From: Scyliorhinus canicula
Lineage: Eukaryota
Assembly: GCF_902713615.1 (NCBI RefSeq)
Contig: NC_052154.1
Span: forward strand, 92,015,030-92,079,029
Length of the DNA stretch: 64,000 nt
Reading direction: 5' to 3'
Part shown: one piece after another, positions 27,293 to 47,136 of the stretch
Numbering within the stretch: the stretch's first letter is position 1
How the letters are laid out: every line of letters begins with the position of its first letter
Program-made: the position numbers and the translations under genes
Notes under the pieces: generated by a model
Seen by the model: only the letters and a program-made list of their open reading frames with translations
Databases searched by the model: none
What the model was told of the DNA's origin: nothing

Positions 27293-27298
27293 TTTATT
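27293..27298 (-). promoter_or_regulatory. Candidate polyadenylation signal AATAAA of the Ig receptor gene
   Basis: tttatt on + is AATAAA on -, ~165 nt after the stop codon. A second candidate lies at 26620-26625. Confidence 0.45.
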
Positions 27299-27463: not shown

Positions 27464-27631
27464 TTACTTGGCTTTTCTTTGCATATAAGCTACACTTGTT
27501 CTTCGTTTTTCCATCCGAATCTGAGCGTATTCTGTACTATTATCCTGATTATTAGCCATTTCTGGTTTCCTTGAGCCTGTCATGTCGAGAGCAGCGTATG
27601 TAACCGCCTTATCCAGTGGATTGGTCTTCGT
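27464..27631 (-). CDS. Exon 6, cytoplasmic tail with ITIM and ITSM, stop codon
   Basis: Acceptor tttttacag|ACG, phase 0. Encodes TKTNPLDKAVTYAALDMTGSRKPEMANNQDNSTEYAQIRMEKRRTSVAYMQRKAK*. ITIM VTYAAL is at 27587-27604 and ITSM TEYAQI at 27518-27535. Confidence 0.85.
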   Translation of the reverse strand, partial: TKTNPLDKAVTYAALDMTGSRKPEMANNQDNSTEYAQIRMEKRRTSVAYMQRKAK

Positions 27632-29120
27632 CTGTAAAAACAATGTTGGTACTTTCATTAGTTCAAGATTTTTTCTTGATTGTAGTCTAGTGTCAATCAG
27701 ATCTATTAAAATAGACAAAGGAGAACAGATTTTGTGCAGATACAAACGTTTACCACAACAGCATTCAAAGCATTCCATGCACTACGCCCATTTTTTTCAT
27801 GATTACAGTTAAATGGTGCCTCTCTGTTCCCCTTCTCATACCCATCTGAGCATGAACTATCCCTTTTATAGGCTTCGCTTTTGGGGCATTTTGGAAATTA
27901 GTAATGTTCCGTGTAGTATAAAGCACCATCATACTCCTTGTTTTGTGCATCGGTTGAACGAATCAAAAATAAGCACTTATGGAATAAATATCCACCTGTA
28001 TCTATGCTCATTTTTCTCCCTTCTACGTTGAACTCTGACGTTTTATACAGGTAGAAGAACAATGTTCACGGAAAGAAATGCCAGACCAGACATTCTGGAA
28101 CACATTTACTGGAAGGCTGTCAGAATCGAAGAAACAAGAGCAGGAGTAAACAATTTGGCCCTTGCAGCCCACTACTCTGTTGAATAATTTCCATAGGAAT
28201 GTACACATTCTTAAGTCATATCCATATCTCTTAATATCCCCAAATCCTCTGCCGTATCCATTGAGTGTGTTCAACGACAGAGCATGCACAGCCTATTGTA
28301 TCGGCAATTCAAACATTTCCAAAACCATTGAGTAATAAACATACTCCTCATCTCAGTTCTAGCAATTGTTATTCTGAAAATGTGAACAACTGGACGATCC
28401 AGCCCAGAATCAAATATTTGAAGCTCCTTCACAACAATATATGATTCAACTAGATCACGTTTAGCCTTTAAATCTCTGGAGAATTGCCGGCCTATTTCAC
28501 ACAATAATGCCAAGCATTGTAATCCAATTGTTGTAAGAAGCAATTTTGTGAACATTAATTGCACTTGAACAATGAAAAGTATGCCGTTCAATAGGCACAT
28601 TGTACAGGACTCGCACAATACTAAAAATATTTTATGCAATGTGGACTCCATCTGGATGTTAGATAGCACGCTGCCATAGCCCTCTAAGGAAAAGGATATG
28701 CAATTTACTTCCATCCACCCTACCAAAGGATTGTACGGATAAATGTAGAATGCTTGTTGTCACAAATTGTGCTTCGTAACCAGAATAACTCTTTCTGTTC
28801 TGTGTCTTATTGTTGCTTCATGACAACTGTAATCTCAAACAAGAGGCGGTGTATCATAGAAGTCGGCGAGTTAATGCAAAAAAACAAAAGTTCCATCTAT
28901 TACAATATGTGGGGAACGGCCGACAAGTATTTCACATTTTCAAGTGAAATTCTCCGTGACTGCTTAACTCGGATCCCCAGCATATATGTAACAGTGCCAC
29001 CCACGGGAATGCAAGCAAAATATTAAGATTATGTCAAATACCGAACTGGGTAATGCAATGATGGTGGAGACAAATGAAAGGAACATCAAATTCGTGTTTC
29101 TTGACTGCCCGTGTTCTTAA

Positions 29121-29475
29121 CATAGAACATAGAACAGTACAGCACAGAACAGGCCCTTTGGCCCTCAATGTTGTGCCGAGCCATGATCACCCTACTCAAA
29201 CCCACGTATCCACCCTATACCCGTAACCCGTAACCCAACAACCCCCCCCTTAACCTTACTTTTTATTAGGACACTACGGGCAATTTAGCATGGCCAATCC
29301 ACCTAACCCGCACATCTTTGGACTGTGGGAGGAAACCGGAGCACCCGGAGGAAACCCACGCACACAGGGGGAGGACGTGCAGACTCCACACAGACAGTGA
29401 CCCAGCCGGGAATCGAACCTGGGACCCTGGAGCTGTGAAGCATTTATGCTAACCACCATGCTACCCTGCTGCCCC
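29121..29475 (-). mobile_element. HE1-type V-SINE, young full-length copy in intron 5
   Basis: Reverse complement is nearly identical to 6268-6630. Confidence 0.93.
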
Positions 29476-30173
29476 TTGCAGCTAACGTTGCAGAAAATGT
29501 GACATTTTAACAGCTCAATGTTTGTTTCCGTGTGGATCAACAGCGTCGCCAGCAGATGGCTTTACGAAGAACATTTTATTAATTATTTGGATATCGATGA
29601 AAATGTGTATTGCAGCTTGAACTAATAGTTCATACTGGATTTTAAAGGAACCTCTGATGCTTTGTCATAACGAAAAACTGTGGTGCGGATTTGGGTTAAA
29701 GCCGTAGCAGGGTGGCTAAGGAAGACAGCCTAATTGCCTCAGGAGCAGTCGTAATTTGTTTGCGAACCTCCAACAGCCCCGTTGACATTTATAACCTCAG
29801 ATTTTATTGACAGAGTTTGGAAACTGAATATAACATGTCAAGCTACGATGGCAAGACATGCACTGCTGCATTCTGGATCCATTTCAGGTTTGGATAATGA
29901 GAATAAATGGTCGACTGAGAGAGATTTACTCATGCATTGGAGGTACGTTTATTTCGTATGTTAACGACCAGAACATCACAGTTGCAATTAATTTACCACT
30001 GACTATTGATATGCTATGTTATCGTGCGTCTGTTGAACTCCCACTGAATTCAATCTCTCTCATTGTGTTTAAATCTTCTGTGGGACGGTACAAAATGCGA
30101 ACATTGTTGGAATAAATCGATTTAAGTTTGTCTAAACTCAAATTTATGATTGAAATAAATGATGGAAACGTAC

Positions 30174-30205
30174 CTCCGGATCAGGATAGTCATTTACTTG
30201 CACTC
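30174..30205 (-). CDS. Exon 5, short cytoplasmic exon
   Basis: Acceptor ctacttttccag|GA and donor GGAG|gtacgt; 32 nt. Converts phase 1 to phase 0 exactly as needed to join the TM exon to the last exon. Encodes (G)VQVNDYPDPE. Confidence 0.72.
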
Positions 30206-30589
30206 CTGGAAAAGTAGAGGGTTTAACATTAAGCTTTTTACAGCTGGTAAACTCAATATATATCACAACAATCCAGATATCACAATTTTTCAAGGAACTG
30301 CTTGGAATCTGGCATATTTTGACATTGGGGAAATATATTGGCAAATGGATTATTCTGATGGCAGACGAACAACGTCAGTCAGATTGACAAATCTTTGGGA
30401 CATGTTCCAAAATGATATAAACTAGCAGAAACTGACATGATACTTTCTCTTCCCTTCGTGTGACGACATAGATGTTCAACAATGTTTAAGTCACTGTGTG
30501 GAAACCAAACGTGTGTTTTAAATTTCACATGCCGTCAGCTAATGTCTAATGGGAGAAATCCCTTGAGCACTGTTATTTAGACATTTTTA

Positions 30590-31340
30590 GAAGAATGAAG
30601 TGTAAAGATCTCCAAATATGCAGATGATACAATGTTGGTTGGGAGGATAAGCTGTGAGGAGGATGCAGAGATACTTCAGCAGAATTTGGACAGGCTGAGC
30701 GAATGGACACATGCATGGCAGATGCCGTATAATGTAGATGAATGTGCTGTTTTGCGACTAGGTAGCAAAGAGAGCAAAACAGATTATTATTTGAATGGGT
30801 GTAAATCGAGAGAGGTAGATACTCAGTGATAACTGGGTGTCCTAATGCATCAGTCACTGAATATAAACGCACAGGTGCAGCAGGCAGTAAAGAAGGCAAA
30901 TAGCATGTTGGCCTTCATAGCGGCGGGTTTAGAGTAAAGGAATATAGGTTGTTTTCTGCAATTGTATAGCCCTGTGTAGGGGCTGGTTTAGCACACTGGG
31001 CTAAATCGCTGGCTTTTAAAGCAGACCAAGGCAGGCCAGCAGCACTGTTCAATTCCCGTACCAGCCTCCCCGAACAGGCGCCGGAATGTGGCGACTAAGG
31101 GCTTTTCACAGTAACTTCATTTGAAGCCTACTCGTGACAATAAACGATTTTCATTTTCACTTATCAATGTATTGGTGAAGCCACACCTGAAGTTCTGTGT
31201 GTCGTTCTGGTGTCCTTAACTGAGGAAAGTTGTTCTTACTGTGGAGAGAGCGCATCGAACGTTTACCAGGCTGACTCCTGGGATGTCGGACTGTCATATG
31301 GCGAGAGATTAAATCAGTTAGGATTATATTAATTGACGTT
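30590..31340 (+). mobile_element. Old CR1 RT fragment with a second-family tRNA SINE inserted at ~30976-31160
   Basis: KYADDTMLVG..SCEEDAEILQQNLDRL. The SINE reads ggggctggtttagcacactgggcta...gcctactcgtgacaataa..(tttca)n. Confidence 0.8.
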
Positions 31341-31342
31341 TA

Positions 31343-31524
31343 TGAAAATGAAATGAAATGAAAATCGCTTATGGCCACGAGTAGGCTTCAATGATGTTAC
31401 TGTGAAAAGCCCCTAGTATCCACATTCCGGCGCCTGTCAGGGAGGCTGGTACGGGAATCGAACCGTGCTGTTAGCCTGCTTGGTCTGCTTTAAAAGCCAG
31501 CGATTAGCCCTGTGAGCTAAACCA
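31343..31524 (-). mobile_element. Second-family tRNA SINE
   Basis: Reverse complement of the 30976-31160 family. (gaaat)n tail. Confidence 0.8.
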
Positions 31525-34500
31525 ATCAGCAGTTGCTGGGAGAAATTTAACTCTTTGTGTGTTGGTGAGTTTTGTGATTGGTAAGTACAATCTTTATTCC
31601 TTTCACTTATTTATTATTTGATACTATATTTGTAATCAGTTAAGGTAAAGGGTAAAAATAGCAGGAGATCCCAGACCTGTGTTATGCTCCTCGTGCACAA
31701 TGTGGGAGTTCAGGGACCTGGCCGATGCCCCTGACTTCTTCATGTGCGGGAAGTGTGTCCAGCTGCAGCTCCTGTTAGACCGCATGACGGCTCTGGAGCT
31801 GCGGATGGACTCACTTTGGAGCATCCGCGATGCTGAGGAGGTCGTGGATAGCACGTTCAGTGGGTTGGTGAGAAAACTGCAGATTTAGATTGGTGACGGA
31901 GACAGGGAATGGGTGACCAAAAGGCAGAGAAAGAGCAGGAAGGCAGTGCAGGTGTCCCCTGCGGTCATCTCCCTCCAAAACAGGTATACCGTTTTGGATA
32001 CTGTTGGGGGAGATGTCTCACCACGGGAAGGCAGTAGTAGCCAGGCTCATGGCACCGTGGCTAGCTCTGCTAAATAGAAGGGCGGGAAAAAGACTGGCAG
32101 AGCTATAGTCATAGGGGATTCAATTGTAAGGGGCAGTAGGCAGGCGTTTCTGTGATCGGAAACGAGACTCCCGAATGGTATGTTGCCTCCCGGGTGCTCG
32201 GGTCAGGGATGACTCCGGTCGGCTGCAGGACATACTGAAGGGGGAGGGTGAACAGCCAGTTGTCGTGGTGCATACAGGCACCAACGATATAGGTAAAAAA
32301 AAGGGATGAGGTCCTACAATCAGAATTTAGGGAGTTTGGAGATAAGTTAAAAAGTAGGACCTCAAAGGTAGTAATCTCAGGATTGCTACCAGTGCCACGG
32401 GACAGTCAGAGTAGAAATTCAAGAATAGTAAGAATGAATACGTGGCTTGTGAGATGGTGCAGGAGGGAGGGGTTCAGATTTTTGGGACATTGGAACCGTT
32501 TCTGGGGGCGGTGGGACAATTACAAAACGGATGGTTTACACCTGGGCAGGACTGGAACCAATGTCCTAGGGGGTGCTTTTGCTAACACTGTTGGGGAGGC
32601 TTTAAACTAATGTGGCAGGGGGATGGGAACCAGATTAGGAAGTTAGAGGTCAGTAAAGAGGCAGCAACTAAAGTCAGTAAGGTACAAGACAATAAACTCA
32701 ATGTGACTAAGGGGAAGAGTAGACAGGGAAGAGATGATGAACGCAAAGGTGGTCTGAGGTGCATTTGTTTTAATGCGAGAAGTGTAGCAGGTAAGGCAGT
32801 TGAACTTAGGGCTTGGATCAGTACCTGGGAATATGATGCTATTGGTATTACTGAGACTTGGATGAGGGAAGGGCAGGACTGGCAACTGAATATCCCAGGG
32901 TATAGATGCTTCAGGAGGGATAGAGAGGGAGGTAGAAGGGGTGGATGAGTTGCATTACTTGTCAGAGATGATATCACAGCTGTGATTAAGGAGGGCACGA
33001 TGGAGGATTCGAGCACTGAGGCAATATGGGTGGATCTGAGAAATAGGAAGGGTGCAGTAACATTGTTGGGACTTTACTACAGGCCTTCCAAAAGCGAGCA
33101 TGAAGTAGAGGTACAAATATGCAGACAGATTATAGAAAAATGTAGGAGCAATAGGGTGGTTGTGATGGGAGATTTTAACTTCCCCAACATTGAATGGGAT
33201 TCGTGTAGTGTTGGAGGCGTAGATGGAACAGAGTTTGTAAGGAGCATCCAGGAGAGTTTTTAGAGCAGTATGTAAATAGTCCAAATCGGGAAGGGGCCAT
33301 ACTGGACCTGGTATTGGGGAATGATCCCGGCCAGGTGGTTGATGTTTCAGTCGGTGATTACTTTGGGAATAGCAATCACAATTCCGTAAGTTTTAGAATA
33401 CTCATGGACAAGGACTGGAGGGGTCCGAAAGGAAGAGTGCTAAAATGGGGAAAGGCAGAGTATAACAAAATTCGGCAGGAGCTAGGGAATGTGGATTGGG
33501 AGCAGCTGTTTAAGGGGAAATCCACAATTGAAATGTGGAAGTCTTTTAAGGAAAGGTTGATTAGAGTGCAGGACAGACATGTTCCTGTGAAAATGAAAGA
33601 TAGAAATGGAAAGATTAGGGAACCATGGATGACGGGTGAAATTGTGAGACTAGCTAAAATGAAAAAGGAAGCATACATAGGATCGAGGCAACTCAAAACT
33701 GATGAAGCTTTGGAGGAATATCGGGAAAGTAGGACGAATCTCAATCACGCAATAAAGAGGGCTAAAAGGGGTCATGAAATATCTTTGGCTAACAGGGTTA
33801 AGGAAAATCCCAAAGCATTTTATTCGTATGTAAGGAGCAAGAGGGTAACTAGAGAAAGGATTGGCCCACTTAAAGACAAAAGAGGAAATTTATGCGTGGA
33901 CTCAGAGGAAATGGGTGAGATTCTTAATGAGTACTTTGCATCGGTATTCACAAAGGAGAGGGGCAAGACGGATGTTGAGGCTCGGGATGGATGTTTAAAT
34001 ACTCTCGGTCAAGTTGTCATACGGAAGGGGGAAGTTTTGGATATTCTAAAAGACATTAGGGTGGACAAGTCCCCAGGACCGGATGGGATCTATCTCAGGT
34101 TTCTGACGGAAGCGAGGGATCGAAATAGCTGGGGCCTTAACAGATATCTTTGCAGCATCCTTGAGCACGGGTGAGGTCCCGGAGAACTGGAGAATTGCTA
34201 ATGTTGTCCGTTGTTTAAGGAAGGGTAGCAGGGATAATCTAGGGAATTATAGACCTGTGAGCTTGACATCAGTGGCAGGCAAACTGTTGGAGAAGATACT
34301 GAGGGACAGGATCTATTCACATCAGGAAGAAAATAGACTTATCAGTGATAGGCAGCATGGTTTTGTGCAGGTTGGGTCATTTCTTACAAACCTAATAGAA
34401 TTCTTTGAGGAAGTGACAAAGTTAATTGATGAGGGAAGGGCTGTAGATGTTGTATACATGGACTTTAGTAAGGCGTTTGATAAGGTTTCCCATGGCAGGT

Positions 34501-35650
34501 TGATGGAAAAAGTGAAGTCGTATGGAGTTCTGTGTGTACTAGCTAGATGGATAAAGAACTGGCTGGGCAACAGAAGACAGAGAGTAGTGGTGGAAGGGAG
34601 TGTCTCAAAATAGAGAAGGGTGACTAGTGGTGTTCCACAGGGATCAGTGCTCGGACCACTGTTGTTTGTGATCTACATAAATGACCTGGAGGAAGGTATA
34701 GGTGGTCTGATTAGCAAGTTTGCAGATGATAAGAAGATTGGTGGAGTTGCAGATAGCGAGGAGGACTGTCAGAGAATACAACAAAATATAGATAGATTGG
34801 AGAGTTGGGCAGAGAAATGGCAGATGGAGTTCAATCCAGGCAAATGTGAGGTGATGCATTTTGGAAGATCAAATTCAAGAGCGGACTATATTGTCAATGG
34901 AAGGGTCTTGGGGATTTGATGTGCAGAGTGATCTGGGAGTTCAGGTCCATTGTACCCTGCAGGTGGCAACGCAGGTTGATAGAGTGGTCAAGAAGGTATA
35001 CAGCATGCTTGCCTTCAGCGGACGGGGTATTGAGTACAAGAGTTGGCAGGTCATGTTACAGTTGTATAGGACTTTGGTTCGGCCACATTTGGAATACTGC
35101 GTGCAGTTCTGGTCGCCACATTACCAGAAGGATGTGGACGCCTTGGAGAGGGTGCAGAGCAGGTTCACCAGGATGTTGCCTGGTATGGAAGGTGCTAGCT
35201 ATGAAGAAAGGTTGAGTAGATTAGGATTGTTTTCGTTGGAAAGACGGAGGTTGAGGGGGGACCTGATTGAGGTCTACACAATTATGAGAGGTATGGACAG
35301 GGTGGATAGCAACAAGCTTTTCCCAAGAGTTGGGGTGTCAGTTACAAGGGGTCACGATTTCAAAGTCAGAGGGGGAAAGTTTAAGGGAGATGTGCATGGA
35401 AAGGTTTTTACGCAGAGGGTGGTGGGTGCCTGGAACGCCTTACCAGCGGACGTGGTAGAGGCTGGCACGATAGCATCATTTAAGAAGCATCTAGACAGGT
35501 ATATGAATGGGCGGGAACAGAGGGAAGTACACCTTGGAAAATAGGAGTCAGGTTTAGATAAAGGATCTGGATCGGCGCAGGCTGGGAGGGCCGAAGGGCC
35601 TGTTCCTGTGCTGTAATTTTCTTTGTTCTTTGTTCTTTGTTCTTTGTTCT
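31525..35650 (+). mobile_element. Near full-length CR1 LINE (ORF1 plus ORF2 with frameshifts and stops) in intron 4, antisense to the host gene
   Basis: ORF1 LCSSC...CGKCVQLQLL and esterase. EN CICFNARS...LYYRP...GDFNFP. RT QHGF...DFSKAFDKV...[10 protein letters not shown]...FADD. (tttgttc)n tail. Confidence 0.94.
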
Positions 35651-35654
35651 AGAA

Positions 35655-36045: not shown

Positions 36046-36064
36046 TATGTAAACTATGTCTCAC

Positions 36065-36175
36065 CTTCTGTTTTTGTTGATATGTATCGCTTCATATTGA
36101 TGATACCCAGCACCAATGATAGCAATCCACCAAAAGCAGCAGCAGAAATCAGCAAGTAATGGGTGGTCGCAGTAT
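36065..36175 (-). CDS. Exon 4, transmembrane segment
   Basis: Acceptor aatcctgcag|AT and donor GAAG|gtgaga; 111 nt, phase 1-1. Encodes (D)TATTHYLLISAAAFGGLLSLVLGIINMKRYISTKTE, an uncharged hydrophobic stretch followed by KR stop-transfer. Confidence 0.85.
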
Positions 36176-37629: not shown

Positions 37630-39285
37630 ATGTTCTAGCTTTGATGTGGAGATGCCAGTGTTGGACTTGGTTGGGCACAATAAGAAGTCTTACAACACCA
37701 GGTAATATCCAACAGGTGTGTTTCGAATCATCAGCATTCAGAGCACAGCCCCGTTTCTTGGAGAGTGAAGTGGTGGGATCCACAACCTCATATATAGACA
37801 AAGTCAATGATGCAAGACGATAATTTGAATGTAAGCATTTGCAAGTAATTAAGTTTTTACAAGTCCAGACGGAGCGACTGGAGAGAGGGATAATCACACG
37901 TTAAAAAGGTGTGAATTCTCTCATGCCACGACAGTTGGTAGGATTTCCCATGCTCAGCCCAGATTGTGGTGGTGAATGTAATGAGTCATGAATCCCCGAT
38001 CCCGGTTGAGGCCATACTCATGTGTGCGGAACTTCGCTATCAGTTTCTGATCGGTGATTCTGTGTTGTCGCACGTCCTGAAGGCTACATTGGAGAACGCT
38101 TACCCGAAGATCAGAGGCTGAATGCCCTAGACTGTTGAAGTGTTCCCCGACTGGTAGGGACCATTTCTGCCTGGCGATTGTCGCACGATGTTCGTCCATC
38201 GGTTGTCACAGCATCAGCATGGTCTTGAAAATGTACCACACCTCGAGTCATCCTTTCCCCCAGCACATGAGGCAGACAACATTGGCTGAATCACGCGAGT
38301 ATATACTGCATACCTGGTGGACGGTGTTCTCACGTGTAATGATGATGCCCATGTCGATGATCTGGCATATCATGTAGAGATTGCCATGGCAGGGTTGTGT
38401 GGTGTCGTGGTCAACATAAAAGACAGCTACAGATGCTGAAACACGTCCTCGTATGTATGGGATATGCTGCTCGACTCATTAATGGACAGTTCCAACGCAA
38501 AACAGCAAAAAACCGCACCGAGCTCCTCGGAAGAATAACACAGGGCACAGCCAACAGAGTACCCTTCGTTGTCCAGTATTTCTCAGCAGCAGAGAAACAA
38601 TGACATCTTCTTTGCAGCCTTCAACACGTCATCGATTAAGAGGAACATCTTGCAAAGGCTATCCCTACACCCCCACTACTTGCCTTCAACCAACCACACA
38701 CCTCGAACAGACCGCTGTTGGAAGAAAACTATCCTGCCGTGAGGTGAACAGCAACCATGAGAACACACAACGCTGCCATGGCAACCTCTGTAGGACGTGT
38801 CAGATACTCATAGAATCAAAGAATTTAGAGTGCAGAAGGAGGTCAGTCGGCCCATTTATCTGCACCGGCACTTGGAAACAGTACCCTTCTCCAGCCCACA
38901 CGCATGAATACGGCCTCCACCGGGACCTGTCTCTATATTCACCCCCCCCCCCTCCACCCCCCCAGCCCTCCCCACCACCACCACCATCACCACCATGTGG
39001 CTGAGCTTGGAAAATGCTATCAACTGTTCTGGCTTGAGACAATTCACACGTTTTTAACCTGTGATTATCCCCTTCTCCAGTTCTGTATGGACCTGTAAGG
39101 ACTTAATTACCTGATAATTTTCGTATTAAAAATATCATCTTGCATTAATGAATTTGTCTATATTTGCGGCTAAGGAACCCACCTCTTCACGAACCTGATG
39201 AAGGAGCTGTGCTCCGAAAGCTAGTGATTCGAAACGAACCTGTTGGACTTTAACCTGGTGTTGTAAGCCTTCTTATTGTTCCAGC
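37630..39285. mobile_element. Penelope-like element with inverted arms (- 37630-38414; + 38415-39285)
   Basis: Minus arm has the GIY-YIG C-terminus (EHRATI...PVGEHFNS.GHSASDLRVSVLQ...KLIAKFRTHEYGLNRD). Plus arm has TANRVPFVVQYF linker and the same THEYGL.RD end. Both terminate in the same pLTR sequence (...aacctgttgga...cctggtgttgtaag). Confidence 0.85.
39191..39230 (+). ncRNA. Minimal type-I hammerhead ribozyme motif in Penelope pLTR
   Basis: CUGAUGA(39195-201)-A-GGAGC/ugu/GCUCC stem II-GAAA(39216-219)-GC-UA. Stem III is reduced to palindromic AGCU. Stem I is only partly paired in this copy. Confidence 0.55.
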
Positions 39286-40269
39286 TATGGGTAGAGAATT
39301 CAATGCCCTGTGGTCTGCCGGTGGCAAGGTTACACTAGAACTGTATGATATGAGTGACAGCTGAATGCACTCAACAGGTCTTTACCTGACCTCGTCTGCC
39401 ACTCCCCCTGGAATAAGAGGTACCAAGTATTAATTTCAGAGACATTAGAAAATGGTACCTGCCAAAATGCCACCGATTAAAGGTAACAAGAAAACAATGA
39501 TGGTGGAATAGGTGACATCAGTTGGCTGTCACCATAACTGAGTGTGATAATTTGCACATCAATAAGGCTTCGAACGAAGATGGGAAATGGTGAGAGACTC
39601 TTGACAAATTAAAACAAAATACCAGTCGGAGAACCCTGGGCACTGCGATATTAAATGAAAATTGTGACTAATGAAAATGATCGATTATTTAAAACAGAAA
39701 AAAACGTGAAAAACATCTGACGATACGTGGATTTCTAAAAAGGCATTTCACTAAAGTTAACCTTAATGGGCTTATTCTGCAAATTTTAATGCACTGTTGC
39801 AAAAAAACGAACGGAGCCCGGTGAATGCAGAAGTAGTTCCACGCATTGCTGTCATCTGCAGCCATGTAACTGAGACTGTCATGACAGCTTGGATTTGATG
39901 AACCGAATCAGATGATGAATCAGATGGAGTTGACGAGCAATGCATATTTTCGCATGATGGAAGGCTGCAAATGAAGGAATACGCCAAGGAATTGTTATGA
40001 TGAGGAAACGGTCAAACAGTATGCATATAGGATCTGAGCTGAAATATCGTGAGAGCAGTTTCGAAGTTCTTTGATGATGGCTAAATGGGTGATTATGACT
40101 TAGGTAACACTGACAGAGAAAGCAGCGGACTTCAGTATGACTCGAAGAGTTTAATGGAATGGTTTCAAGGTAGTTGCAACTTAAGGTGAATAAAGCTGGT
40201 TTGTAAATGCTTCAGGGAAGAGGAGCTACCAAGAAACGGAGACGTGTTTTTCACGTGGCTTGCTGTTGA

Positions 40270-41925
40270 TATTCAGTGGAGCTGGCAGAAGTCAGAGTCG
40301 GAAAAGCCATCCGAGATACCAAGAGAGAGTATCAAACCAAGCGAGAGTCACAGGCAGACTCTCGAGGGTTGTGGCAAGGACTAAACAACATAACGGGCCA
40401 CAAGGCGAAGCCGAACAGTATCTATGGCAGCAACGCACCCCTCCCCAATGAACTCAATGTATTCTATGCTCCGTTCAAGCAGGTAACCAACAATCCGCTG
40501 TTGAGTGCCCCAGCAGCCCATAATTCACCCATACCAACCATCACAGCTTCCGAAGTCAGATCGGCCTTCCTGAAAGTGAAACCTCAAAAGACGACGGGCC
40601 CGGATGGGATTCCTGGTCGTGCACTCAGAGCCTGCACGGACCAGCTGGCAGAGGTATTCAGGCATCTTTAACCTGTCCTTGTTCCACTCCGAGGTCCCCA
40701 CCTGCTTTAAGAAGAGAACCATCATACCGAGACCAAAGAAGAACCAGGCAACGTGCCTCAATGACTAACGTCCAGTGAAAAATGAAAAAAAATGAAAATC
40801 GCCTATTGTCACGAGTAGGCTTCAATGAAGTTACTGTGAAAAACCCCTAGTCGACACATTCCGGCGCCTGTCCGGGGAGGCTGGCCCTGACTTCAGTCAT
40901 AATGAAGTGCTCCTCGAGGTTGATCGTGAAGCGCATCACCTCCTTACTCCCAGAACGCCTTGATCCACTGCAATTCGCATACCGTTGCAACTGGTCCACA
41001 TCAGACGTAATTTCCCTGGCCCTACACTCATCCCTAGAGCATCTCGAAAACAAGGACTCCTACATCAGACTCCTATTTATTGACTACAGCTCCACCTTCA
41101 ACACCATATTCCTAGTCAAGCTCATATCAAAGCTCCAAAACCTAGGACTTGGCTCTCCACTCTGCAACAGGATCCTCGATTTTCTGACCAACAGACCACA
41201 ATCAGCAAGAGTGAACAACAACACCTCCTTCACGATTTTCCTCAGTACCGGGGCCCCGCAAGGCTGCGTACTTAGCCCCCTACTCTACTCCCTATACATA
41301 CACGAATGCGTGGCAAAACTTGGTTCCAACTCCATCTACAAGTTTGCTGACGATGCGACCACAGTGGGCCGGATCTCGAATAACGACGAGTCAGAATACA
41401 GGAGGGAGATAGAGAACCTAGTGGAGTGGTGTAGCGACAATAATCTCTCCCTCAATGCCAGCAAAGCTAAAGAGCTGGTCATTGACTTCAGGAAGCAAAG
41501 TACTGTCCACACCCCTGTCAGAATCATGGAGATGCTTAGCCGTTTCAGATTCCTAGCGGTGCACATCTCCAAAAATCTGTCCTGGTCCACCCACGTCGAC
41601 GCTACCACCAAGAAAGCACATCAACGCCTATACTTCCTCAGGAAACTAAGGAAATTGGGCATGTCCACATTAACCCTTACCAAATTTTACAGATGCACCA
41701 TAGAAAGCATCCTATCGGGCTCAATCACAGCCTGGTATGGCAACTGCTCGGCCCAGGACCGCAAGAAACTTCAGAGAGTCGTGAACACCGCCCAGTCCAT
41801 CACACAAACCTGCTTCCCATCCATTTACTCCATCTACACCTCCCGCTGCCTGGGGAAAGCGGGCAGCATAATCAAAGATCCCTCCCACCTGGCTTACTCA
41901 CTCTTCCAACTTCTTCCATCGGGCA
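40270..41925 (+). mobile_element. Rex1/Babar-type non-LTR retrotransposon RT region, with a SINE fragment (-) at ~40777-40885
   Basis: [46 protein letters not shown]...[44 protein letters not shown]. Confidence 0.9.
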
Positions 41926-42754
41926 GTACACGTGACAATAAACAAATCCAATCCAATCCAATCGAAAAGAACGATGTTGCAGCGGTGAAAAAGTTCTGGA
42001 ATCAATCTTGCGACACCCATGACGTGACGCTACAATGACGAGCGATGGCTATTTTTCATGGGGGAGGAGTTACACTGTGGCTCTTGTAAGTTGCAAATGG
42101 AGCAATATGTTTATGATGGTCAACTTTGTATTGGTCCTTCAGATATAATCTGTGAAGACATGCATTCTAGATGCATTTAAAAGACTTGCGCTAGTACCTA
42201 GCAAGTGCAATTTAGAAGTTATGTATGTCAGGGAAATGGCATTTCAGGTATGCAGCATAGAAAACAGTCGCAACAATCAGAATTACATGAAGTGATCCCA
42301 CACAGAATTGGTCCAACTTAATGCGAATGGCATTGACGTGTGGCCTCTCGGTGAGACGAAAACCATGAGGGGAGCAGTGCAATCTAAATAAAAACATTTT
42401 TGGGCAAAATCAGGAGAACAACAGGATGTATATTCTGGAGACTTGTAAACTAATTTAGGAAAATTGTAAGGTGCTAACGATGTGCCTGGAATGAATTGAA
42501 TTTGTACATAGCGACATTAAATCTAAATTTGCGAAGGTGACGCAAAAGTTAGAAATCACTGCTCAGCCTTCAACTGAAATATTGTCCACAATTCTGCACA
42601 ACACAGGACGGTAAGCATGTCAATAACCTGGTAAATTTACACGGGACGTTTGCGGGAATTAATGCATTCAGTTATTTGCAGAGTTTCTAAAATCTGGGAC
42701 TTTCTCATTAGAGGAGCTAAAATCAAGATCTTCTGTAAATCCTGGTTCAGAATT

Positions 42755-43055
42755 GTGAAGCGTTTGACAGGGCTGCCTCACAGCGCCAGTGATCCAGGTG
42801 TAAATCCTCCCTTGATTAACTGCTGTGAGGAGGTTGCAAGTACTCCTGTGTATGCATGGGTTACTTTCATGTGCTTTGGTTTCCTCTCCCAGTCGAATAA
42901 TGTGCAGGTTAGTTTACAGGGATAGGGCGCAGTGGTCGTGGGGAGTGGGGGTGCGGTAAGTCTGCATGGGGAACTGTTTCGGAAGTTTGCTGTGGACTCA
43001 ATTGGCCAAATGACCTCCTTATGCATTGCCTTATGCCTCCTCTATGATCTATGAT
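42755..43055 (+). mobile_element. Decayed V-SINE
   Basis: ctgcctcacagcgccag...gtgtatgcatgggtt...gtgcaggttag...tggactcaattggccaaatgacctcc. Confidence 0.6.
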
Positions 43056-43355
43056 CTTCTGTGATCCACCTACTGCATACCTAGCTCGCAGCTACATAGC
43101 TATATTTGTTGTCTAAAACTAAAATACATTTGAGGAGAAATATTTTTTTCTTTAAATTATTGTTCGATTAGTATATAAGGAATGTCTGAGCAGCAACCGT
43201 TGAATATGTGATTGAAGACACCTCATTTACAGAGTTATTACAAAACCAAAGATCTGCAGCGTGTGGTTAAATGATATAACATTTTATCTGGAATCCCCAT
43301 AGCTATGCCAGACCGGATATGATTTAAATTTATATTCCACTTTCAGAATCCTTAC

Positions 43356-43667
43356 CTTTGATGGGATAGGTGACAATGTGAGTGGCCGATGCTGGAACCT
43401 GAAGGGTACTGTGAGTTACCAGGCATGTATAAACAGTTCCATCCCGGATTGTCTGTGTCTCTTGCAAACGGCTAGAAGCTTCATATAGTCCATTGATATT
43501 CAATGTAATGACGGTCTTTATTCCTGTTGTGGTTTCTTTGCCATCCTTATACCATGTGAAGCTGATATTCTTTGGGAAAAAGGAAGGTGTTGAGCATAAA
43601 ACAGCAGGGAGCACAAATGCATCATTTTCAAGGTGCTGTGAGTAAATCTTCAGTGGGGTTGGTCGGG
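43356..43667 (-). CDS. Exon 3, Ig C1-set domain
   Basis: Acceptor atgttcctag|CC and donor AAAG|gtaagg; 312 nt, phase 1-1. Encodes LCSTPSFFPKNISFTWYKDG...NGLYEASSRL...YTCLVTHSTL, i.e. C1-type CxxxxF(F/Y)PxxIxxxW and the YxCxVxH Ig/MHC signature. Confidence 0.93.
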
Positions 43668-44209
43668 CTAGGAACATGTAAGAGAAGGGAAAAAGCTGTT
43701 TTTAAAAGTCAGAAAAGATTAACTTTGGGTTCATCCAATGCCTGTCCAAATTTCGCAGCGTTGGAGAATGAAGAGCGTGGCAGGCGTTGAACATGGGTTT
43801 TACTGTACACAATAGGTATCGACACCCTAAACAACATCTTTATAAATACGATCGACAACAATGTTTAGATGCAAGCGGACAAATATCAGGTGAGGGAAAA
43901 GTTCTGCCTATTCCGAAAAATGCACGCTTTTCCTTTTGTTGGAAAATAAATATGGAGTGGACTCTGAACTGACATCCGATGGACTATGCTGTGTGTTATG
44001 ACATGTCTTTGCGAAAATACTATACTGTTGAGCTTCAAAAGTGAAAGTAAAATCTACTACCTGATTCACATGAGGATACAGATGATTCCATCGTTATTGT
44101 GTATCAAAAGGATGATGTAAATGCAGGTTGGGATATGAAGCAGCCTTTACTTCTTAATATTACGAGCTTAAAAATCTTAGCTGTTACTTGTTAATTTATA
44201 GTAGGAGCA

Positions 44210-45325
44210 AAGAGCAAAGAACGATAAAGCACAGGAACAAGCCCTTCTGCCCTCCACACCTGCGCCGACCATGGTACCTGCCTAAACTAAAACCGTATGC
44301 ACTTCCTGAGTCGATATCCTTCCATTCCCACCCTATTCATATATTTGTCTAGATGCCCCTTAAACTCCATTATCGTACCAGCTCCCACCACCTCTCAAGG
44401 CCGTGCGTTCCATATATTTACCACCCTCTGTGTAAAAGACTTGCCTCGCACTTCTGTTCTAAACTTTTCCCCACGTACTTTCAATCTATGTCCTCTAGTC
44501 CCTGACTCTCTTACCCTAGGAATGAGCATCTGACTATCCACTGTGTTCATGCCACTTACAATCTTGGAAATCTCTATCAGGTTGCCTCTCAACCTCCGTC
44601 ATTCCAGTGAGAACGCAATAAGTTTAACTAACCTCTTCTCAGAGTAAATGCCCTCCATTCCAGGCAACATCCGAGGAAATTACTTCTGTACCCTGTAGGA
44701 AGCATCCACATCATTTTGGTAGTGTGGCGTCCAGAATTGTACACACCATTCCAAATCAGGCCTAACTGAGGTTCTGTACAGCTGCAACATGACTTGCCAA
44801 TTTTTATACTCAATGCCCCGACCAATGAAGGCCAGCATGCTGTGTGCCTTAATGACCACCTTATCCACATGCGTTGCCCCTTTCAGTTGTCGGAGGACAT
44901 GCACGCCCAGATCTCTCTGACTGTCAGTACTCGCAAGAGTTCTACCATTTATTGTATAATTCCTACATCCATTGGACCTTCCAAAGTCCATTACCTCACA
45001 TTTGTCCGAATTAAACTCCGTCAGCCATTTTTCCTCCCAAGACTCCAAGCAGTTTATATCTTGCTGTCTCCTCTGACAATCCTCCTCTGTCGCTGCAATT
45101 CCAGCACTTTTTGTGTCTTCCACGAACTTGCTAATTGGACCAGCTACATGATTTTCAAAATTATTTATATATACCATGAACAATGAAGGCCCAAGGACTG
45201 ATCCCTGTGGAACGCCGTTAGTCACAGCCTTTCATTCAGAAAAACACCCTTCTACTTCTTCCCGATGTCATCTGTGCCCAAGCCCGTTCTGTATCCAGCT
45301 TACCTGCTCTTCACTGATCCCAAGG
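44210..45325 (-). mobile_element. CR1 RT/3' fragment with internal deletion, intron 2
   Basis: ORF 44680-45225 [10 protein letters not shown]...QAQLGLI region. Tail ctttgctctttgc at 44205-44220. Confidence 0.88.
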
Positions 45326-45790
45326 GCAGCACTGTAGTACAGTGGTTAGCACAGTTGCTTCACTGATGCAGGGTCACAGGATAGAACATAGAACATAGAA
45401 CATTACAGCGCAGTACAGTCCCTTCGGTCCTCGATGTTGCGCCGAACTGTGAAACCACTCTAAAGCCCATCTATTCCCTTATCGCCCATATGTCTATCCA
45501 ATGAAATCGATTCCTGGGTTGGGTCACTGTCTGCGCGTGGTCTGCACATTCTCCGCATGTCTGTGTGGGTTTCCTCCGGGTGCTCCGGTTTCCTCCCACA
45601 GTCCAAAGATGTGCAGGTTATGTGGATTGGCCATGATAAATTGCCCTTAGTGTCCAAAAACCTTCAGGATTACTGGGGCATGGGGAGAGTGTGGAGGCTT
45701 GGGCTTAAGTGGGGTGCTCTTTCGAAGAGCCGGTGCAGACTCGATGGGCCCAATTGCCTCCATCTGCACTGTAAATTATATGATTCTATG
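45325..45790 (+). mobile_element. V-SINE interrupted by a ~120-bp antisense CR1 3' tail (45383-45505)
   Basis: The SINE head stops at cacaggat and resumes at aatcgattcctgggttggg. The insert is the catagaacatagaac...gttgcgccgaactgtg CR1 tail. Confidence 0.82.
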
Positions 45791-46580
45791 ATATTATGAA
45801 TTCACCTTTTGTACCAGTCTACCGTGAGGTACATTGTTAAGAAGTTTTCATCCTTGGTTACCAAGTTGAAAAAAATAAACGATGAAATATTTAAAAACCC
45901 GTTTGCACGTTTGGGAGTCTCATTACTGGGAACTAGTCGAGTTAAGACATACACGTCATACATACATAGATGCAAGTGTCCTTTAAAGGTACTACTTGCA
46001 TTGTTGCTTTCATACACTACCGCTGCAACATTTCGATTGAACATCTAATAGATTATAATCATCGTGATCAATATTTCTGCAATTCTGGAACATACAATAG
46101 ATTAGGAACTATAGCGGCCGTCTTTGCTATTTTAACGTTTACTAATGAAACAATTGGAAGAGATATCGCTCGTTCTACAGGCTCTACGGTCTTCTGGATT
46201 CTTATTTGGCTTTCCCCAAATGAGGCTCCAGTTCCACTTTGACAAAGGGTCACCTGGACTCGAAATAGTAGCGCTTTTCTCTCCCCACAGATGCTGCCTG
46301 ACCTGCTGAGATTTTCCAACATTTTCTTTTTGGTTCCAGTTCCACTGCATTGTGACTGATTCTTAGCTGCCCTTGGGCATGACGGAGCAGGTAATTCAGT
46401 TCCGTTGCAGTTCGGGATGGGCAACAAAAGTTGATTTTGCCAGTGAAATCCGGCAGACCACGGAAGGGTAAACAATAAGTGTTAGGTTGCAAGGTAAACC
46501 TTCTGAAACACAATCGAGAAAAGATTCGAAGTAAGAAGTAATAGTGATATATTCCAATCTCGTCTTATTTTCATACCTAC

Positions 46581-46901
46581 CACAGACTGTTAACCTGGAC
46601 CCGGTTCCGTTGGCAACAAGTTTACCTCGTCGGGCGACGCTGCAATAGTATACTCCTGCGTCCTGCAAACTCAAATTGTGTATCTGGAGGGTGCCGCTGA
46701 AAGTATTAATCAGGACAGTTACTTTTCTGGCATCTTGTTCCCTGCAAAGATATTGATTATCACCATGTTTCCACCAGCGTATCTTTACAGCTGGGCCATC
46801 TTCAATGTAAGGAAGCGAGCAAAGAAAGGAAACATTTTCACCTGTGTTTTTGGTCACATTTTCTGGGTGCTGGAGTATCTTCGCTGAAGTTTGCTCGGCG
46901 T
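46581..46901 (-). CDS. Exon 2, Ig V-set domain with J-like G strand
   Basis: Acceptor ttctctgtag|AC and donor TGTG|gtaggt; 321 nt, phase 1-1. Encodes (D)AEQTSAKILQHPENVTKNTGENVSFLC...IRWWK...QDAGVYYCSVARRGKLVANGTGSRLTVC, with canonical B-strand Cys, C-strand Trp, DxGxYxC and GxGxxLTV. Confidence 0.93.
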
Positions 46902-47057
46902 CTACAGAGAATCAAAGCCGAATTAATGAAGTGAAATGAAATGTCAAAAAGCGAGTTTGTTCCTCTGTCCGAAGGGAAAAAAAACTATGATGTACGAAAT
47001 GAACGTTATATAATTGCGCGACTTAATCAGAAAAGAACACATTAAATGAGCAGATAC

Positions 47058-47136
47058 CTGTAATGATAAGCGACAGAGCCGAGAGGCTGTGGAATACAAC
47101 ACTCAGGAACATTCTCAACAAGTTGCTGAGCTGCAT
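47058..47136 (-). CDS. Exon 1 (signal peptide) of V-C1 Ig-superfamily ITIM/ITSM receptor
   Basis: Minus strand ATG CAG CTC...ATT ACA G|gtatct encodes MQLSNLLRMFLSVVFHSLSALSLIIT. It is hydrophobic and leader-like, 79 nt, with a phase-1 donor matching the phase-1 acceptor of the V exon 156 nt downstream. In-frame Met9 (agaATG) has the better Kozak context. Confidence 0.8.

What the first reader, a model, noticed from the sequence alone, without database searches (positions are those of the whole stretch)
27464..47136. Intact, transposon-buried V-C1 inhibitory immune receptor gene (leader-V-C1-TM-ITIM-ITSM, 340 aa)
Seen in sequence: six exons (79+321+312+111+32+168 = 1023 nt) join with canonical GT-AG sites and matching phases into one stop-free ORF across ~19.7 kb of TE-filled introns. 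Established: V+C1 ectodomains with an ITIM/ITSM tail are the architecture of SIRP-family receptors (SIRPalpha has V-C1-C1), and C1 domains are otherwise largely confined to antigen receptors, MHC and a few MHC-linked genes such as tapasin and B7-H6. Inference: this is a cartilaginous-fish SIRP-like or 'VJ-C1' inhibitory receptor with a single C1. It is likely uncharacterised and may belong to a lineage-specific inhibitory checkpoint family.
Basis: partly seen in the sequence, partly recalled or inferred. Interest (0 to 1): 0.85.

Follow-up and report, generated by a model that had tools for sequence, protein, structure and literature searches.

The report
Catshark SIRP-like V-C1 inhibitory receptor gene
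This is a real, transcribed small-spotted catshark gene for a two-domain (V plus C1) cell-surface receptor with an inhibitory tail; it belongs to a large shark, ray and chimaera family that databases already label "SIRP-alpha-like", so the main gain is a corrected gene model, not a new kind of gene.

Summary
Six minus-strand exons (47136-47058, 46901-46581, 43667-43356, 36175-36065, 30205-30174, 27631-27464) join through canonical GT-AG sites into a 1023-nt, 340-codon frame.

- **Domains:** Pfam calls a V-set and a C1-set domain.
- **Organism and annotation:** The window is Scyliorhinus canicula. RefSeq XP_038661941.1 ("HLA-DO beta-like", 221 aa) already joins exons 3-6 exactly as predicted. 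It replaces the leader and V exons with a 43-nt start exon inside a LINE fragment.
- **Transcripts:** Contigs from four public runs cover the V exon alone. Two show the leader-V joint, and the contigs continue from the V donor straight into the first bases of the C1 exon.
- **Homologue:** The model aligns end to end (53% identity) with a 335-aa Heterodontus protein.
- **Family:** It is one member of a monophyletic family seen in 18 named chondrichthyan species. Long-tailed members have an uncharged membrane span and an ITIM-ITSM pair 23 residues apart. Short-tailed members often carry Arg or Lys in the membrane span.
- **Nearest outside relatives:** The first C1 domain of lobe-finned-fish SIRP-like proteins, with moderate support only.

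The scan had already found a paralogue 356 kb away. Verdict: real, ordinary in kind, a new member of a database-known but unstudied family.

The parts
47058..47136 (-). Exon 1: start codon and signal peptide (79 nt, ends in phase 1). An alternative in-frame start is Met9 at 47112.
   Evidence: ATG at 47136 and donor ACAG|GTATCT. The joint 47058|46901 is seen in contigs of X25 and X26, and the X25 contig reaches 47119. Homologues start at the position of Met9.
46581..46901 (-). Exon 2: V-set domain with a germline-joined J-like G strand (ANGTGSRLTV), 321 nt.
   Evidence: Pfam V-set E 8.9e-12. Contigs of X1, X25, X26 and X27 cover exactly this exon. Runs hold 0.54-1.00 of its sampled words. Family alignment A1 has invariant Cys27, Trp42 and Cys86 in exon numbering.
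43356..43667 (-). Exon 3: C1-set domain (312 nt).
   Evidence: Pfam C1-set E 9e-13. It is 100% identical to residues 16-118 of XP_038661941.1. The loose-end consensus at 46581 equals the reverse complement of its first 30 bases in X25 and X26, and differs at one base in X1.
36065..36175 (-). Exon 4: stalk, uncharged membrane span (LLISAAAFGGLLSLVLGIINM) and the start of the tail (111 nt).
   Evidence: It is the only 111-nt open AG..GT exon with a hydrophobic run of at least 17 residues in the interval. It is present in XP_038661941.1. There is no charged residue in the membrane-span core.
30174..30205 (-). Exon 5: 32-nt cytoplasmic exon (VQVNDYPDPE) that moves the phase from 1 to 0.
   Evidence: It has the best splice context of 10 open candidates. 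It is used in XP_038661941.1. It lies colinear with the GVKNDGERSSSPEQQ segment of Heterodontus P0160 in the end-to-end alignment.
27464..27631 (-). Exon 6 coding part: the ITIM VTYAAL (27604-27587), the ITSM TEYAQI (27535-27518) and the stop codon. The two tyrosines are 23 residues apart.
   Evidence: tblastn of the tails of five of six relatives tested hits this exon at E 1.6e-14 to 3.6e-4.
26607..27463 (-). Inferred 3' UTR, ending about 20 nt after an ATTAAATAAA signal at 26629-26620.
   Evidence: The signal lies 835 nt after the stop. This fits the 1480 nt of the X27 contig beyond the V exon.
44560..44602 (-). First coding exon of the RefSeq model XP_038661941.1 (MTEVERQPDRDFQD, 43 nt). 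It lies inside a LINE fragment and gives no signal peptide. It is probably a modelling artefact or a minor transcript.
   Evidence: Located. It overlaps the LINE 3' ORF at 44395-44592, next to the reverse-transcriptase ORF at 44680-45225.
32610..35544 (+). LINE fragment with reverse-transcriptase ORFs in intron 4, antisense to the gene.
   Evidence: RVT_1 E 7.9e-16 for 34161-34613. ORFs are listed.
40276..42038 (+). LINE fragment in intron 3, antisense to the gene.
   Evidence: RVT_1 E 1.9e-23 for 40902-42038.
44395..45225 (-). LINE fragment in intron 2, in the sense orientation.
   Evidence: RVT_1 E 1.5e-7 for 44680-45225.
27840..27929 (-). Probable decayed relic of the membrane-proximal ITIM/ITSM exon that other family members carry.
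   Evidence: tblastn E 0.017, 33% identity to the Hemiscyllium P0166 tail. The ITIM +3 residue is Arg, the ITSM Tyr is His, and the GT donor is out of phase. This is weak evidence.

Best explanation
The locus is an intact, transcribed gene of Scyliorhinus canicula. It encodes a type I membrane protein of 340 aa (332 aa if Met9 is the start).

Its parts, in order:
- a signal peptide;
- one V-set domain with a germline-joined J-like strand;
- one C1-set domain;
- an uncharged membrane span;
- a 77-residue tail with an ITIM (VTYAAL) and an ITSM (TEYAQI) whose tyrosines are 23 residues apart.

It is one member of a monophyletic multigene family found across chimaeras, sharks and rays. Databases name these proteins automatically as SIRP-alpha-like, among other names.

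Shown here: the gene structure, the transcription and splicing of exons 1-2-3, family membership, and the domain and motif content.

Inferred: the V domain binds a ligand that is still unknown. Src-family kinases then phosphorylate the two tyrosines. The tandem SH2 domains of SHP-1 or SHP-2 dock on the pair, and the phosphatase damps activating signals in the cell that carries the receptor.

Short-tailed relatives with Arg or Lys in the membrane span probably act as activating counterparts. That would make this a paired-receptor family working in the manner of SIRP-alpha and SIRP-beta.
For: **Structure:**
- Exons and phases were reproduced.
- Pfam gives V-set 8.9e-12 and C1-set 9e-13.

**Transcription:**
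- Four runs hold V-exon words, while 15 other indexed runs of the species hold none.
- Contigs cover the V exon only.
- The E1-E2 joint appears in two runs.
- The loose end in X1, X25 and X26 reads into the C1 exon.
- The contigs are 463-1815 nt long; three of the four exceed 1.1 kb.
- Contig length fits exons 3-6 plus a UTR ending at a poly(A) signal.

**Downstream exons:** RefSeq XP_038661941.1 has exons 3-6 joined identically.

**Family:**
- The model is 53% identical over 335 aa to Heterodontus P0160, from leader to C-terminus.
- C1 profile scores are at least 75.7 bits for members and at most 55.9 bits for all others.
- The family is monophyletic at 99/99.
- Every named member is chondrichthyan.

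**Signalling logic:**
- The ITIM-to-ITSM tyrosine spacing is 23 residues in 18 of 20 pairs.
- Of 43 long-tailed models, 35 have at least two motifs and only one has Arg or Lys in the membrane span. Of 30 short-tailed models, 14 have Arg or Lys there.
- ITIM/ITSM tandems bind the N-SH2 and C-SH2 domains of SHP-2, and the SHP binding residues are conserved across jawed vertebrates (PMC12151841).

**SIRP affinity:**
- The careful C1 tree puts the family sister to the first C1 of lobe-finned-fish SIRP-like proteins at 94/53.
- A tree that holds the two together is not rejected (p-AU 0.805).
- The V-C1 region aligns colinearly with a Latimeria SIRP-beta-1-like protein (28.6% identity over 220 aa, E 3e-18).
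- The top Swiss-Prot fold matches of the Heterodontus homologue's model are bovine and human SIRP-alpha.
Against: - No protein, ligand or phosphatase binding has been shown. The inhibitory function rests on motifs alone.
- The joints E3-E4, E4-E5 and E5-E6 were not seen in reads here.
- The tissues and cell types of the four runs are hidden, so immune-cell expression is assumed.
- SIRP affinity is only moderately supported. SH-aLRT is 53, and a quick tree placed the family beside Ig/UrIg-like C1 domains at 60.
- By single-sequence search, the best solved-structure match of the C1 exon is UrIg2.
- Fold matches to CD276, PD-L1, NCR3LG1 and Ig lambda are nearly as good as those to SIRP-alpha.
- The sarcopterygian 'SIRP-like' outgroups carry automatic names that I did not verify.
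- The protein has one C1 domain, not the two of SIRPs.
Confidence: 0.8

Rival explanations
1. The family is not a SIRP relative. It is a separate relic of the non-rearranging VJ-C1 lineage that gave rise to antigen receptors (UrIg/UrIg2-like), and it later acquired an inhibitory tail.
For: - The best single-sequence match to a solved structure for the C1 exon is UrIg2 V-C1-C2-C3 (E 1.7e-16 summed; best domain 27.2 bits).
- The V exon resembles 'antigen receptor' (VNAR-type) clusters in the Atlas.
- A quick tree put the family next to the Ig/UrIg-like multi-C1 clade, with weak support of 60.
- The leader is split and the VJ is a single exon, as described for UrIg2 (PMC12227049).
Against: - The careful tree puts the family with lobe-finned-fish SIRP-like C1 at 94/53.
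- The constrained SIRP tree had a higher likelihood than the free quick tree.
- UrIg2 has 9-11 C domains and UrIg also has several. This family has one, occasionally two.
- In per-domain profile scores, lungfish and coelacanth SIRP-like proteins are the best and fourth-best non-members.
Confidence: 0.15
2. The protein is a B7/butyrophilin-type ligand (like NCR3LG1/B7-H6, CD276 or PD-L1) and not a receptor. Its tail motifs would serve reverse signalling or be incidental.
For: - NCBI names several family members NCR3LG1-like, CD276 homolog or PD-L1-like.
- Foldseek matches to CD276, PD-L1 and NCR3LG1 have E near 1e-16, close to SIRP-alpha at 1e-17, and they have higher TM-scores.
Against: - A J-like GxGS/TxLxV strand is nearly invariant in the family. 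It is a mark of antigen-receptor, SIRP and NKp30-type V domains; this point rests on established knowledge, not on a test here.
- The C domain scores as C1-set (48.8 bits), far above C2-set_2 (16.7 bits).
- The fixed 23-residue ITIM-ITSM tandem and the charged-membrane-span, short-tail counterparts are the pattern of paired receptors.
- TM-scores are inflated for proteins of the same length and deflated for three-domain SIRPs.
Confidence: 0.07
3. The RefSeq model is the true main product: a V-less, C1-only protein that starts in the LINE fragment at 44602. On this reading the leader and V exons belong to a minor or non-coding transcript, or the gene as a whole is a transcribed pseudogene.
For: - XP_038661941.1 exists with that start.
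- I could not lay reads over 43300-45539, so use of the 44602 exon is untested.
- A decayed tail exon in intron 5 shows that the gene has lost parts.
Against: - Contigs in X1, X25 and X26 run from the V exon directly into the C1 exon.
- The RefSeq start gives no signal peptide for a protein with an extracellular Ig domain and a membrane span.
- The start exon lies in a transposon.
- The full 340-codon frame is open, and its canonical Ig residues are those invariant across 23 family members.
- Full-length homologues all have leader-V-C1.
Confidence: 0.05

Closest known systems
Chondrichthyan 'SIRP-alpha-like' V-C1 predicted proteins, e.g. Heterodontus francisci P0160 (named 'immunoglobulin lambda-1 light chain-like', 335 aa), Callorhinchus milii XP_007902824.2 and Heptranchias perlo XP_067853494.1
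   Same: - The architecture matches exon by exon: leader, V with NGTGSxLxV, C1 starting PPTPLKI, uncharged membrane span, short exon, and a last exon with ITIM and ITSM 23 residues apart.
- Identity to P0160 is 53% over 335 aa.
- The group is a monophyletic family.
   Different: - This catshark copy has the short tail form with one ITIM/ITSM pair. Many members have two or three pairs.
- It has an extra Cys in the V domain (YLC) and a Cys at the V-C1 border (TVC). The second is shared with a few members.
- Its RefSeq model lacks the V domain.
SIRP-alpha / SIRP-beta (SHPS-1; tyrosine-protein phosphatase non-receptor type substrate 1) of bony vertebrates
   Same: - It has a V domain with a J-like strand followed by a C1-set domain.
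- It has an inhibitory tail with tyrosine motifs.
- The family has short-tailed members with a basic residue in the membrane span.
- The family C1 is sister to the first C1 of lobe-finned-fish SIRP-like proteins at 94/53.
- SIRP-alpha is the top Swiss-Prot fold match.
- From memory, not tested here: the human SIRP-alpha tail has very similar ITYADL...TEYASI pairs and a polymorphic V domain.
   Different: - It has one C1 domain, not two.
- Identity to a coelacanth SIRP-like protein is only about 29%.
- No one-to-one orthology or synteny was shown.
- CD47 binding is unknown.
UrIg / UrIg2, non-rearranging shark VJ-C1 genes (PMC12227049; PDB 9dmx)
   Same: - It has a germline-joined VJ exon with a split leader and C1-type constant domains.
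- It is found in cartilaginous fish.
- UrIg2 is the best single-sequence match to a solved structure for the C1 exon.
   Different: - UrIg2 has 9-11 C domains and is expressed mainly in gill and liver.
- No ITIM/ITSM tail is described for UrIg2 in the part of the paper I read.
- The family C1 does not group with the multi-C1 chondrichthyan proteins in the careful tree.
PD-1 and BTLA (ITIM plus ITSM tandem inhibitory receptors)
   Same: - The tail logic is the same: an ITIM followed about 23-25 residues later by a TEYAxI-type ITSM. Together these bind the two SH2 domains of SHP-2 (PMC12151841).
- Ala at ITIM pY+1 matches cartilaginous-fish PD-1.
   Different: PD-1 and BTLA have a single V or I-type domain and no C1 domain. 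They are unrelated in ectodomain sequence.

Membership tests
Chondrichthyan V-C1 'SIRP-alpha-like' family | Colinear full-length similarity across leader, V, C1, membrane span and tail | tested here: met
   53% identity over 335 aa to P0160, model residues 9-338 against 1-333.
Chondrichthyan V-C1 'SIRP-alpha-like' family | C1 domain scores with the family profile, well separated from other C1 domains | tested here: met
   The window's own C1 (as P0002) scores 137 bits. Members score at least 75.7 bits and all other proteins at most 55.9 bits.
Chondrichthyan V-C1 'SIRP-alpha-like' family | Falls inside the family clade in a domain tree | tested here: met
   The family clade has 99/99 support. 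The window's C1 sits in a 100/96 subclade with Heterodontus, Chiloscyllium, Heptranchias, Mobula and catshark P0007.
SIRP family (SIRP-alpha/beta/gamma) | N-terminal V-set domain with a J-like G strand, encoded without rearrangement | tested here: met
   V-set E 8.9e-12. ANGTGSRLTV lies within the single V exon. The X25 transcript contig is identical to the germline.
SIRP family (SIRP-alpha/beta/gamma) | Two C1-set domains after the V domain (V-C1-C1) | tested here: not met
   There is one C1 exon. No other V or C1 exon exists in the 64-kb window. Most family members have nC1 = 1.
SIRP family (SIRP-alpha/beta/gamma) | Phylogenetic grouping of its domains with SIRP domains | tested here: inconclusive
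   The family is sister to the first C1 of lobe-finned-fish SIRP-like proteins at UFBoot 94 / SH-aLRT 53. The AU test does not reject this grouping. A quick tree disagreed at support 60. The outgroup names are automatic.
SIRP family (SIRP-alpha/beta/gamma) | Binds CD47 (SIRP-alpha) and recruits SHP-1/SHP-2 through tail tyrosines | not testable with these tools
   Only the motifs can be read: VTYAAL and TEYAQI.
SIRP family (SIRP-alpha/beta/gamma) | Conserved synteny with the SIRP locus | not tested
ITIM/ITSM inhibitory immunoreceptors (functional class) | Uncharged membrane span plus a cytoplasmic (S/I/V/L)xYxx(I/V/L) motif and a TxYxx(V/I) motif | tested here: met
   The membrane-span core has no charged residue. 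The ITIM is VTYAAL and the ITSM is TEYAQI, with tyrosines 23 residues apart. Motif definitions are as given in PMC12151841.
UrIg / UrIg2 | VJ domain followed by several (three to eleven) C1-type domains | tested here: not met
   It has a single C1. UrIg2 has 9-11 (PMC12227049).
Rearranging antigen receptors (Ig/TCR) | V and J segments separate in the germline and joined by RAG | tested here: not met
   The V and the J-like strand are contiguous in one germline exon. The transcript contig is colinear with it and has no junctional differences.

The most novel reading that the evidence does not exclude
The family is the cartilaginous-fish sister lineage of the SIRPs. It would be a polymorphic, paired (activating and inhibitory) VJ-C1 receptor system that keeps the ancestral single-C1 form.

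On this reading the V-exon differences between individuals are allelic diversity kept by ligand-driven or pathogen-driven selection. Three non-reference contigs show nine amino-acid replacements against two silent codons, some in the CDR3-equivalent loop. That would date SIRP-type self/non-self sensing to the base of jawed vertebrates.
Probability: 0.2. Interest if true: 0.65.

Novelty: new member of a known kind. Interest (0 to 1): 0.38.

Why it matters
- **Annotation:** It corrects a public gene model. RefSeq calls this gene 'HLA class II DO beta chain-like' and gives it a transposon-derived start with no V domain or signal peptide. Names within the family swing between SIRP-alpha, Ig lambda, tapasin-related, CD276, NCR3LG1, PD-L1 and MHC class II beta, which would mislead any comparative immunogenomics survey.
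- **Biology:** V-C1 proteins outside the antigen receptors are few, and they matter in arguments about how Ig and TCR arose. This family spans all chondrichthyans, has members that look inhibitory and members that look activating, and shows a moderately supported link to SIRPs. It is a reasonable subject for a dedicated study.
- **Limit:** This single gene adds one well-supported member and does not add a new principle.

Tried and rejected
- **First read-laying run (43300-47200):** That cost the chance to test the C1 acceptor and the RefSeq start exon with reads.
- **Profile searches of solved structures with the family V and C1 alignments:** Both rankings were dominated by multi-domain proteins (titin, contactins, IgA, IgG heavy chains) whose scores add up over domains. 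They could not rank families.
- **Foldseek against solved structures:** It returned only antibody light chains at 24-26% identity, which reflects what the PDB contains.
- **Word-seeded searches with P0002, P0160 and the family alignment:** They returned only chondrichthyan proteins. This may partly reflect the word filter, so it does not prove absence from bony vertebrates.
- **Search for a full-length copy of this exact protein in the databases:** Only the 221-aa model is present.
- **PRARP genes as a possible match:** The only held paper that mentions them lists them with NKp30 as VJ genes and, unlike UrIg, does not call them VJ-C1 genes. The original paper is not in the library.
- **The UrIg J Immunol paper:** It was not held.
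- **The spliced 340-aa protein as a query:** It has no reference form. It was used only inside scripts and never sent to the capped database tools.

Full report
**1. What is in the sequence**

The gene lies on the minus strand.

| Exon | Coordinates | Length | Content |
|---|---|---|---|
| E1 | 47136-47058 | 79 nt | start codon, signal peptide |
| E2 | 46901-46581 | 321 nt | V domain |
| E3 | 43667-43356 | 312 nt | C1 domain |
| E4 | 36175-36065 | 111 nt | stalk, membrane span |
| E5 | 30205-30174 | 32 nt | short cytoplasmic exon |
| E6 | 27631-27464 | 168 nt with stop | ITIM/ITSM tail |

Every border is a canonical AG or GT site and the phases match. The joined sequence is 1023 nt and reads as 340 codons without a stop.

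- E4 is the only 111-nt open AG..GT interval with a long hydrophobic run between E3 and E6.
- E5 was one of ten open 32-nt candidates, so it was not secure from sequence alone. It does have the best polypyrimidine tract and donor.
- Pfam scores E2 as V-set (E 8.9e-12) and E3 as C1-set (E 9e-13, 48.8 bits, against 16.7 bits for C2-set_2).
- No other V-like or C1-like exon exists in the 64-kb window.
- The introns hold three LINE fragments with reverse-transcriptase ORFs (RVT_1 E 7.9e-16, 1.9e-23 and 1.5e-7) and several SINE copies. 'Transposon-buried' is therefore accurate.

**2. Organism and existing annotation**

An exhaustive HMMER search with the C1 exon found a 221-aa protein that is 100% identical over the exon (P0002).
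- It is RefSeq XP_038661941.1 of Scyliorhinus canicula, named 'HLA class II histocompatibility antigen, DO beta chain-like'. It sits on a 198.8-Mb chromosome of GCA_902713615.2.
- Its first 15 residues come from a 43-nt exon that starts at 44602. That exon lies inside the LINE fragment of intron 2 and provides no signal peptide.

The leader and V exons are missing from the public model.

**3. Transcript evidence**

Four runs of this species hold 0.54-1.00 of the V-exon words. Fifteen other indexed runs of the species hold none. I laid their contigs on 45780-47700.
- In all four runs one contig covers exactly 46581-46901, with zero depth in the flanking intron bins.
- X25 and X26 show the joint 46901|47058 (skips 156 nt, ends CT..AC, that is GT..AG on the gene's strand). 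This is the predicted E1-E2 junction.
- At 46581 the contigs of X25 and X26 continue with 30 letters that are the exact reverse complement of the first 30 bases of E3. X1 does the same with one base different. The V exon is therefore spliced directly to the C1 exon.
- The contigs are 463-1815 nt long.
- The X27 contig extends 1480 nt beyond the V exon. Exons 3-6 give 623 nt, and the remaining 857 nt would end about 20 nt after an ATTAAATAAA signal lying 835 nt past the stop. This is circumstantial support for the rest of the model and argues against extra exons.
- I could not test the three downstream junctions or the RefSeq start exon with reads.

**4. Start codon**

All full-length homologues begin at the position of Met9 of the model. 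Met9 (ATG at 47112) has A at -3, while Met1 (47136) has C at -3. Either start gives the same signal peptide core and the same mature protein.

**5. The family**

The 340-aa model aligns from leader to C-terminus with Heterodontus francisci P0160 (335 aa, 53% identity). It aligns with dozens of other predicted proteins from 18 named species of chimaera, shark and ray.
- Their automatic names are inconsistent: SIRP-alpha-like (the commonest), SIRP-beta-1-like, Ig lambda-1 light chain-like, tapasin-related, CD276 homolog, NCR3LG1-like, PD-L1-like and MHC class II beta-like.
- The family alignments show the canonical Ig residues, a nearly invariant NGTGSxLxV strand at the end of V, and a PPTPLKI start of C1.
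- With a family C1 profile, members score at least 75.7 bits (most above 100). Every other protein among the 150 best hits of the exhaustive search scores at most 55.9 bits. The family is a discrete group.
- In the C1 tree it is monophyletic (98 in the quick tree, 99/99 in the careful tree). It holds several old subclades, each with sharks and rays. The window's gene sits in a 100/96 subclade with P0160 and with a second catshark gene, P0007.
- At least four catshark members map to this same chromosome.
- The scan had already reported a paralogue 356 kb beyond this window, plus similar genes elsewhere in the genome.

**6. Signalling logic**

The window's protein has an uncharged membrane span and a 77-residue tail. 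The tail carries VTYAAL (ITIM consensus) and TEYAQI (ITSM consensus), with the tyrosines 23 residues apart.
- The same 23-residue spacing occurs in 18 of 20 ITIM-ITSM pairs across the family.
- Of 43 family models with tails of 64 residues or more, 35 have at least two such motifs and only one has Arg or Lys in the membrane-span core.
- Of 30 models with tails of 56 residues or fewer, 14 have Arg or Lys there, and all 30 have at most one motif.
- Some short models may be truncated predictions. Even so, this is the classic pattern of paired inhibitory and activating receptors.
- ITIM-ITSM tandems act together on the N-SH2 and C-SH2 domains of SHP-2. The SHP residues that bind them are conserved across jawed vertebrates (PMC12151841).

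The step from motifs to SHP recruitment and inhibition is inference.

**7. Relation to known families**

*SIRP.*
- By per-domain profile score, a lungfish SIRP-alpha-like protein is the best non-member C1 domain and a coelacanth SIRP-beta-1-like protein is the fourth best.
- The coelacanth protein aligns colinearly over V plus C1 (28.6% identity over 220 aa, E 3e-18).
- The careful tree makes the family sister to the first C1 domain of these lobe-finned-fish proteins at UFBoot 94 / SH-aLRT 53.
- A tree that forces this grouping had a higher likelihood than the quick free tree and is not rejected (p-AU 0.805).
- An AlphaFold model of P0160 (mean pLDDT 74; both Ig domains and the membrane helix are confident, the tail is disordered) has bovine and human SIRP-alpha as its top Swiss-Prot matches (E 1e-17 and 3e-17). 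CD276, PD-L1, NCR3LG1, TCR beta, Ig lambda, tapasin-related protein and butyrophilins follow within two to three orders of magnitude.
- The defining V-C1-C1 ectodomain is not met, because there is only one C1.
- I therefore file the gene as SIRP-like in architecture and probable kinship, not as a SIRP orthologue.

*UrIg and UrIg2.* They share the germline VJ exon and C1-type domains, and UrIg2 gives the best single-sequence match to a solved structure. However, they have many C domains and do not group with the family in the careful tree.

*Rearranging receptors.* They are excluded because V and J are one germline exon and the transcript is colinear with it.

**8. Variation between individuals**

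Compared with the reference, the V-exon contigs of X1, X26 and X27 differ at 7, 4 and 8 positions. X25 is identical to the reference.
- Together these are 13 variable sites in 321 nt.
- They give nine different amino-acid replacements: H38R, E40K, T43N, N45S, L90F, I91K, L105S, R117P and K120I.
- Two further codons change only silently.
- R117P and K120I lie in the CDR3-equivalent loop.
- The numbers are too small for a test. Contigs show one consensus per run, and a near-identical paralogue is not excluded. This is a lead, not a finding.

**9. Literature**

Seven full-text searches found no description of this family. The shark MHC paper and the UrIg2 section I read discuss VJ and VJ-C1 relics (NKp30, PRARP, UrIg, UrIg2). 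A term search of the MHC paper found no mention of SIRP or ITIM. The library lacks most subscription journals, so this is not proof that no description exists.

**10. Verdict**

The gene is real, intact and transcribed, and its public model is wrong at the 5' end. It is one more member of a family that is large, spans all chondrichthyans, is named only automatically, and appears to be unstudied. The family consists of SIRP-like V-C1 paired receptors. This is ordinary in kind and modest in interest as a single locus. The family as a whole deserves a proper study.

Noticed in passing
window 27840-27929 (-): A stretch in intron 5 reads MVLYTTRNITNFQNAPKAKPIKGIVHAQMG. It resembles the membrane-proximal ITIM/ITSM exon of other family members (tblastn E 0.017). 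The ITIM +3 residue is Arg, the ITSM Tyr is His, and the GT donor is out of phase. It is probably a decayed exon, which would explain why this copy has only one ITIM/ITSM pair.
   Followed up: partly
family proteins P0024, P0012, P0171, P0091, P0098 and others: Short-tailed family members often carry Arg or Lys in the membrane-span core (14 of 30). Long-tailed ITIM/ITSM members almost never do (1 of 43). This suggests paired activating and inhibitory receptors in sharks, rays and chimaeras.
   Followed up: partly
window 46581-46901 (V exon), runs X1, X26, X27: There are 13 variable sites between individuals. They give nine amino-acid replacements against two silent codons, including two replacements in the CDR3-equivalent loop. 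The V domain may be polymorphic, or a near-identical paralogue may exist.
   Followed up: partly
window 46235-46364: Many short contigs lie in intron 2 at very high summed word depth (5,000-21,000) in all four runs, with loose ends on both sides. This is a fragment of a highly expressed or highly repeated element, not part of the gene.
   Followed up: no
window 47372-47548 (+ as laid): One 177-nt contig of run X25 (depth 2.4) lies 236-412 nt upstream of the start codon. It could be a 5' non-coding exon, promoter-proximal transcription or an unrelated transcript.
   Followed up: no
window 45507-45760, with copies at 6344-6494, 10726-10991, 25153-25286, 29266-29416, 60012-60164 and others: A SINE family with a conserved core occurs at least a dozen times in the window. 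One copy tripped the read-laying filter.
   Followed up: partly
window 38850-39100, both strands: There are ORFs rich in Pro, Gly and His runs (for example PPPPPPPQPSPPPPPSPP and HHHHHHHH). This is low-complexity sequence in intron 3, probably part of a transposon.
   Followed up: no
window 46662-46664 and 46582-46584 (model residues Cys79 and Cys133): There are two cysteines beyond the canonical Ig pair. One in the V domain (YLC) is unique among the 23 aligned members. One at the V-C1 border (TVC) is shared with Callorhinchus P0157 and P0099. They may allow a disulfide-linked dimer.
   Followed up: no
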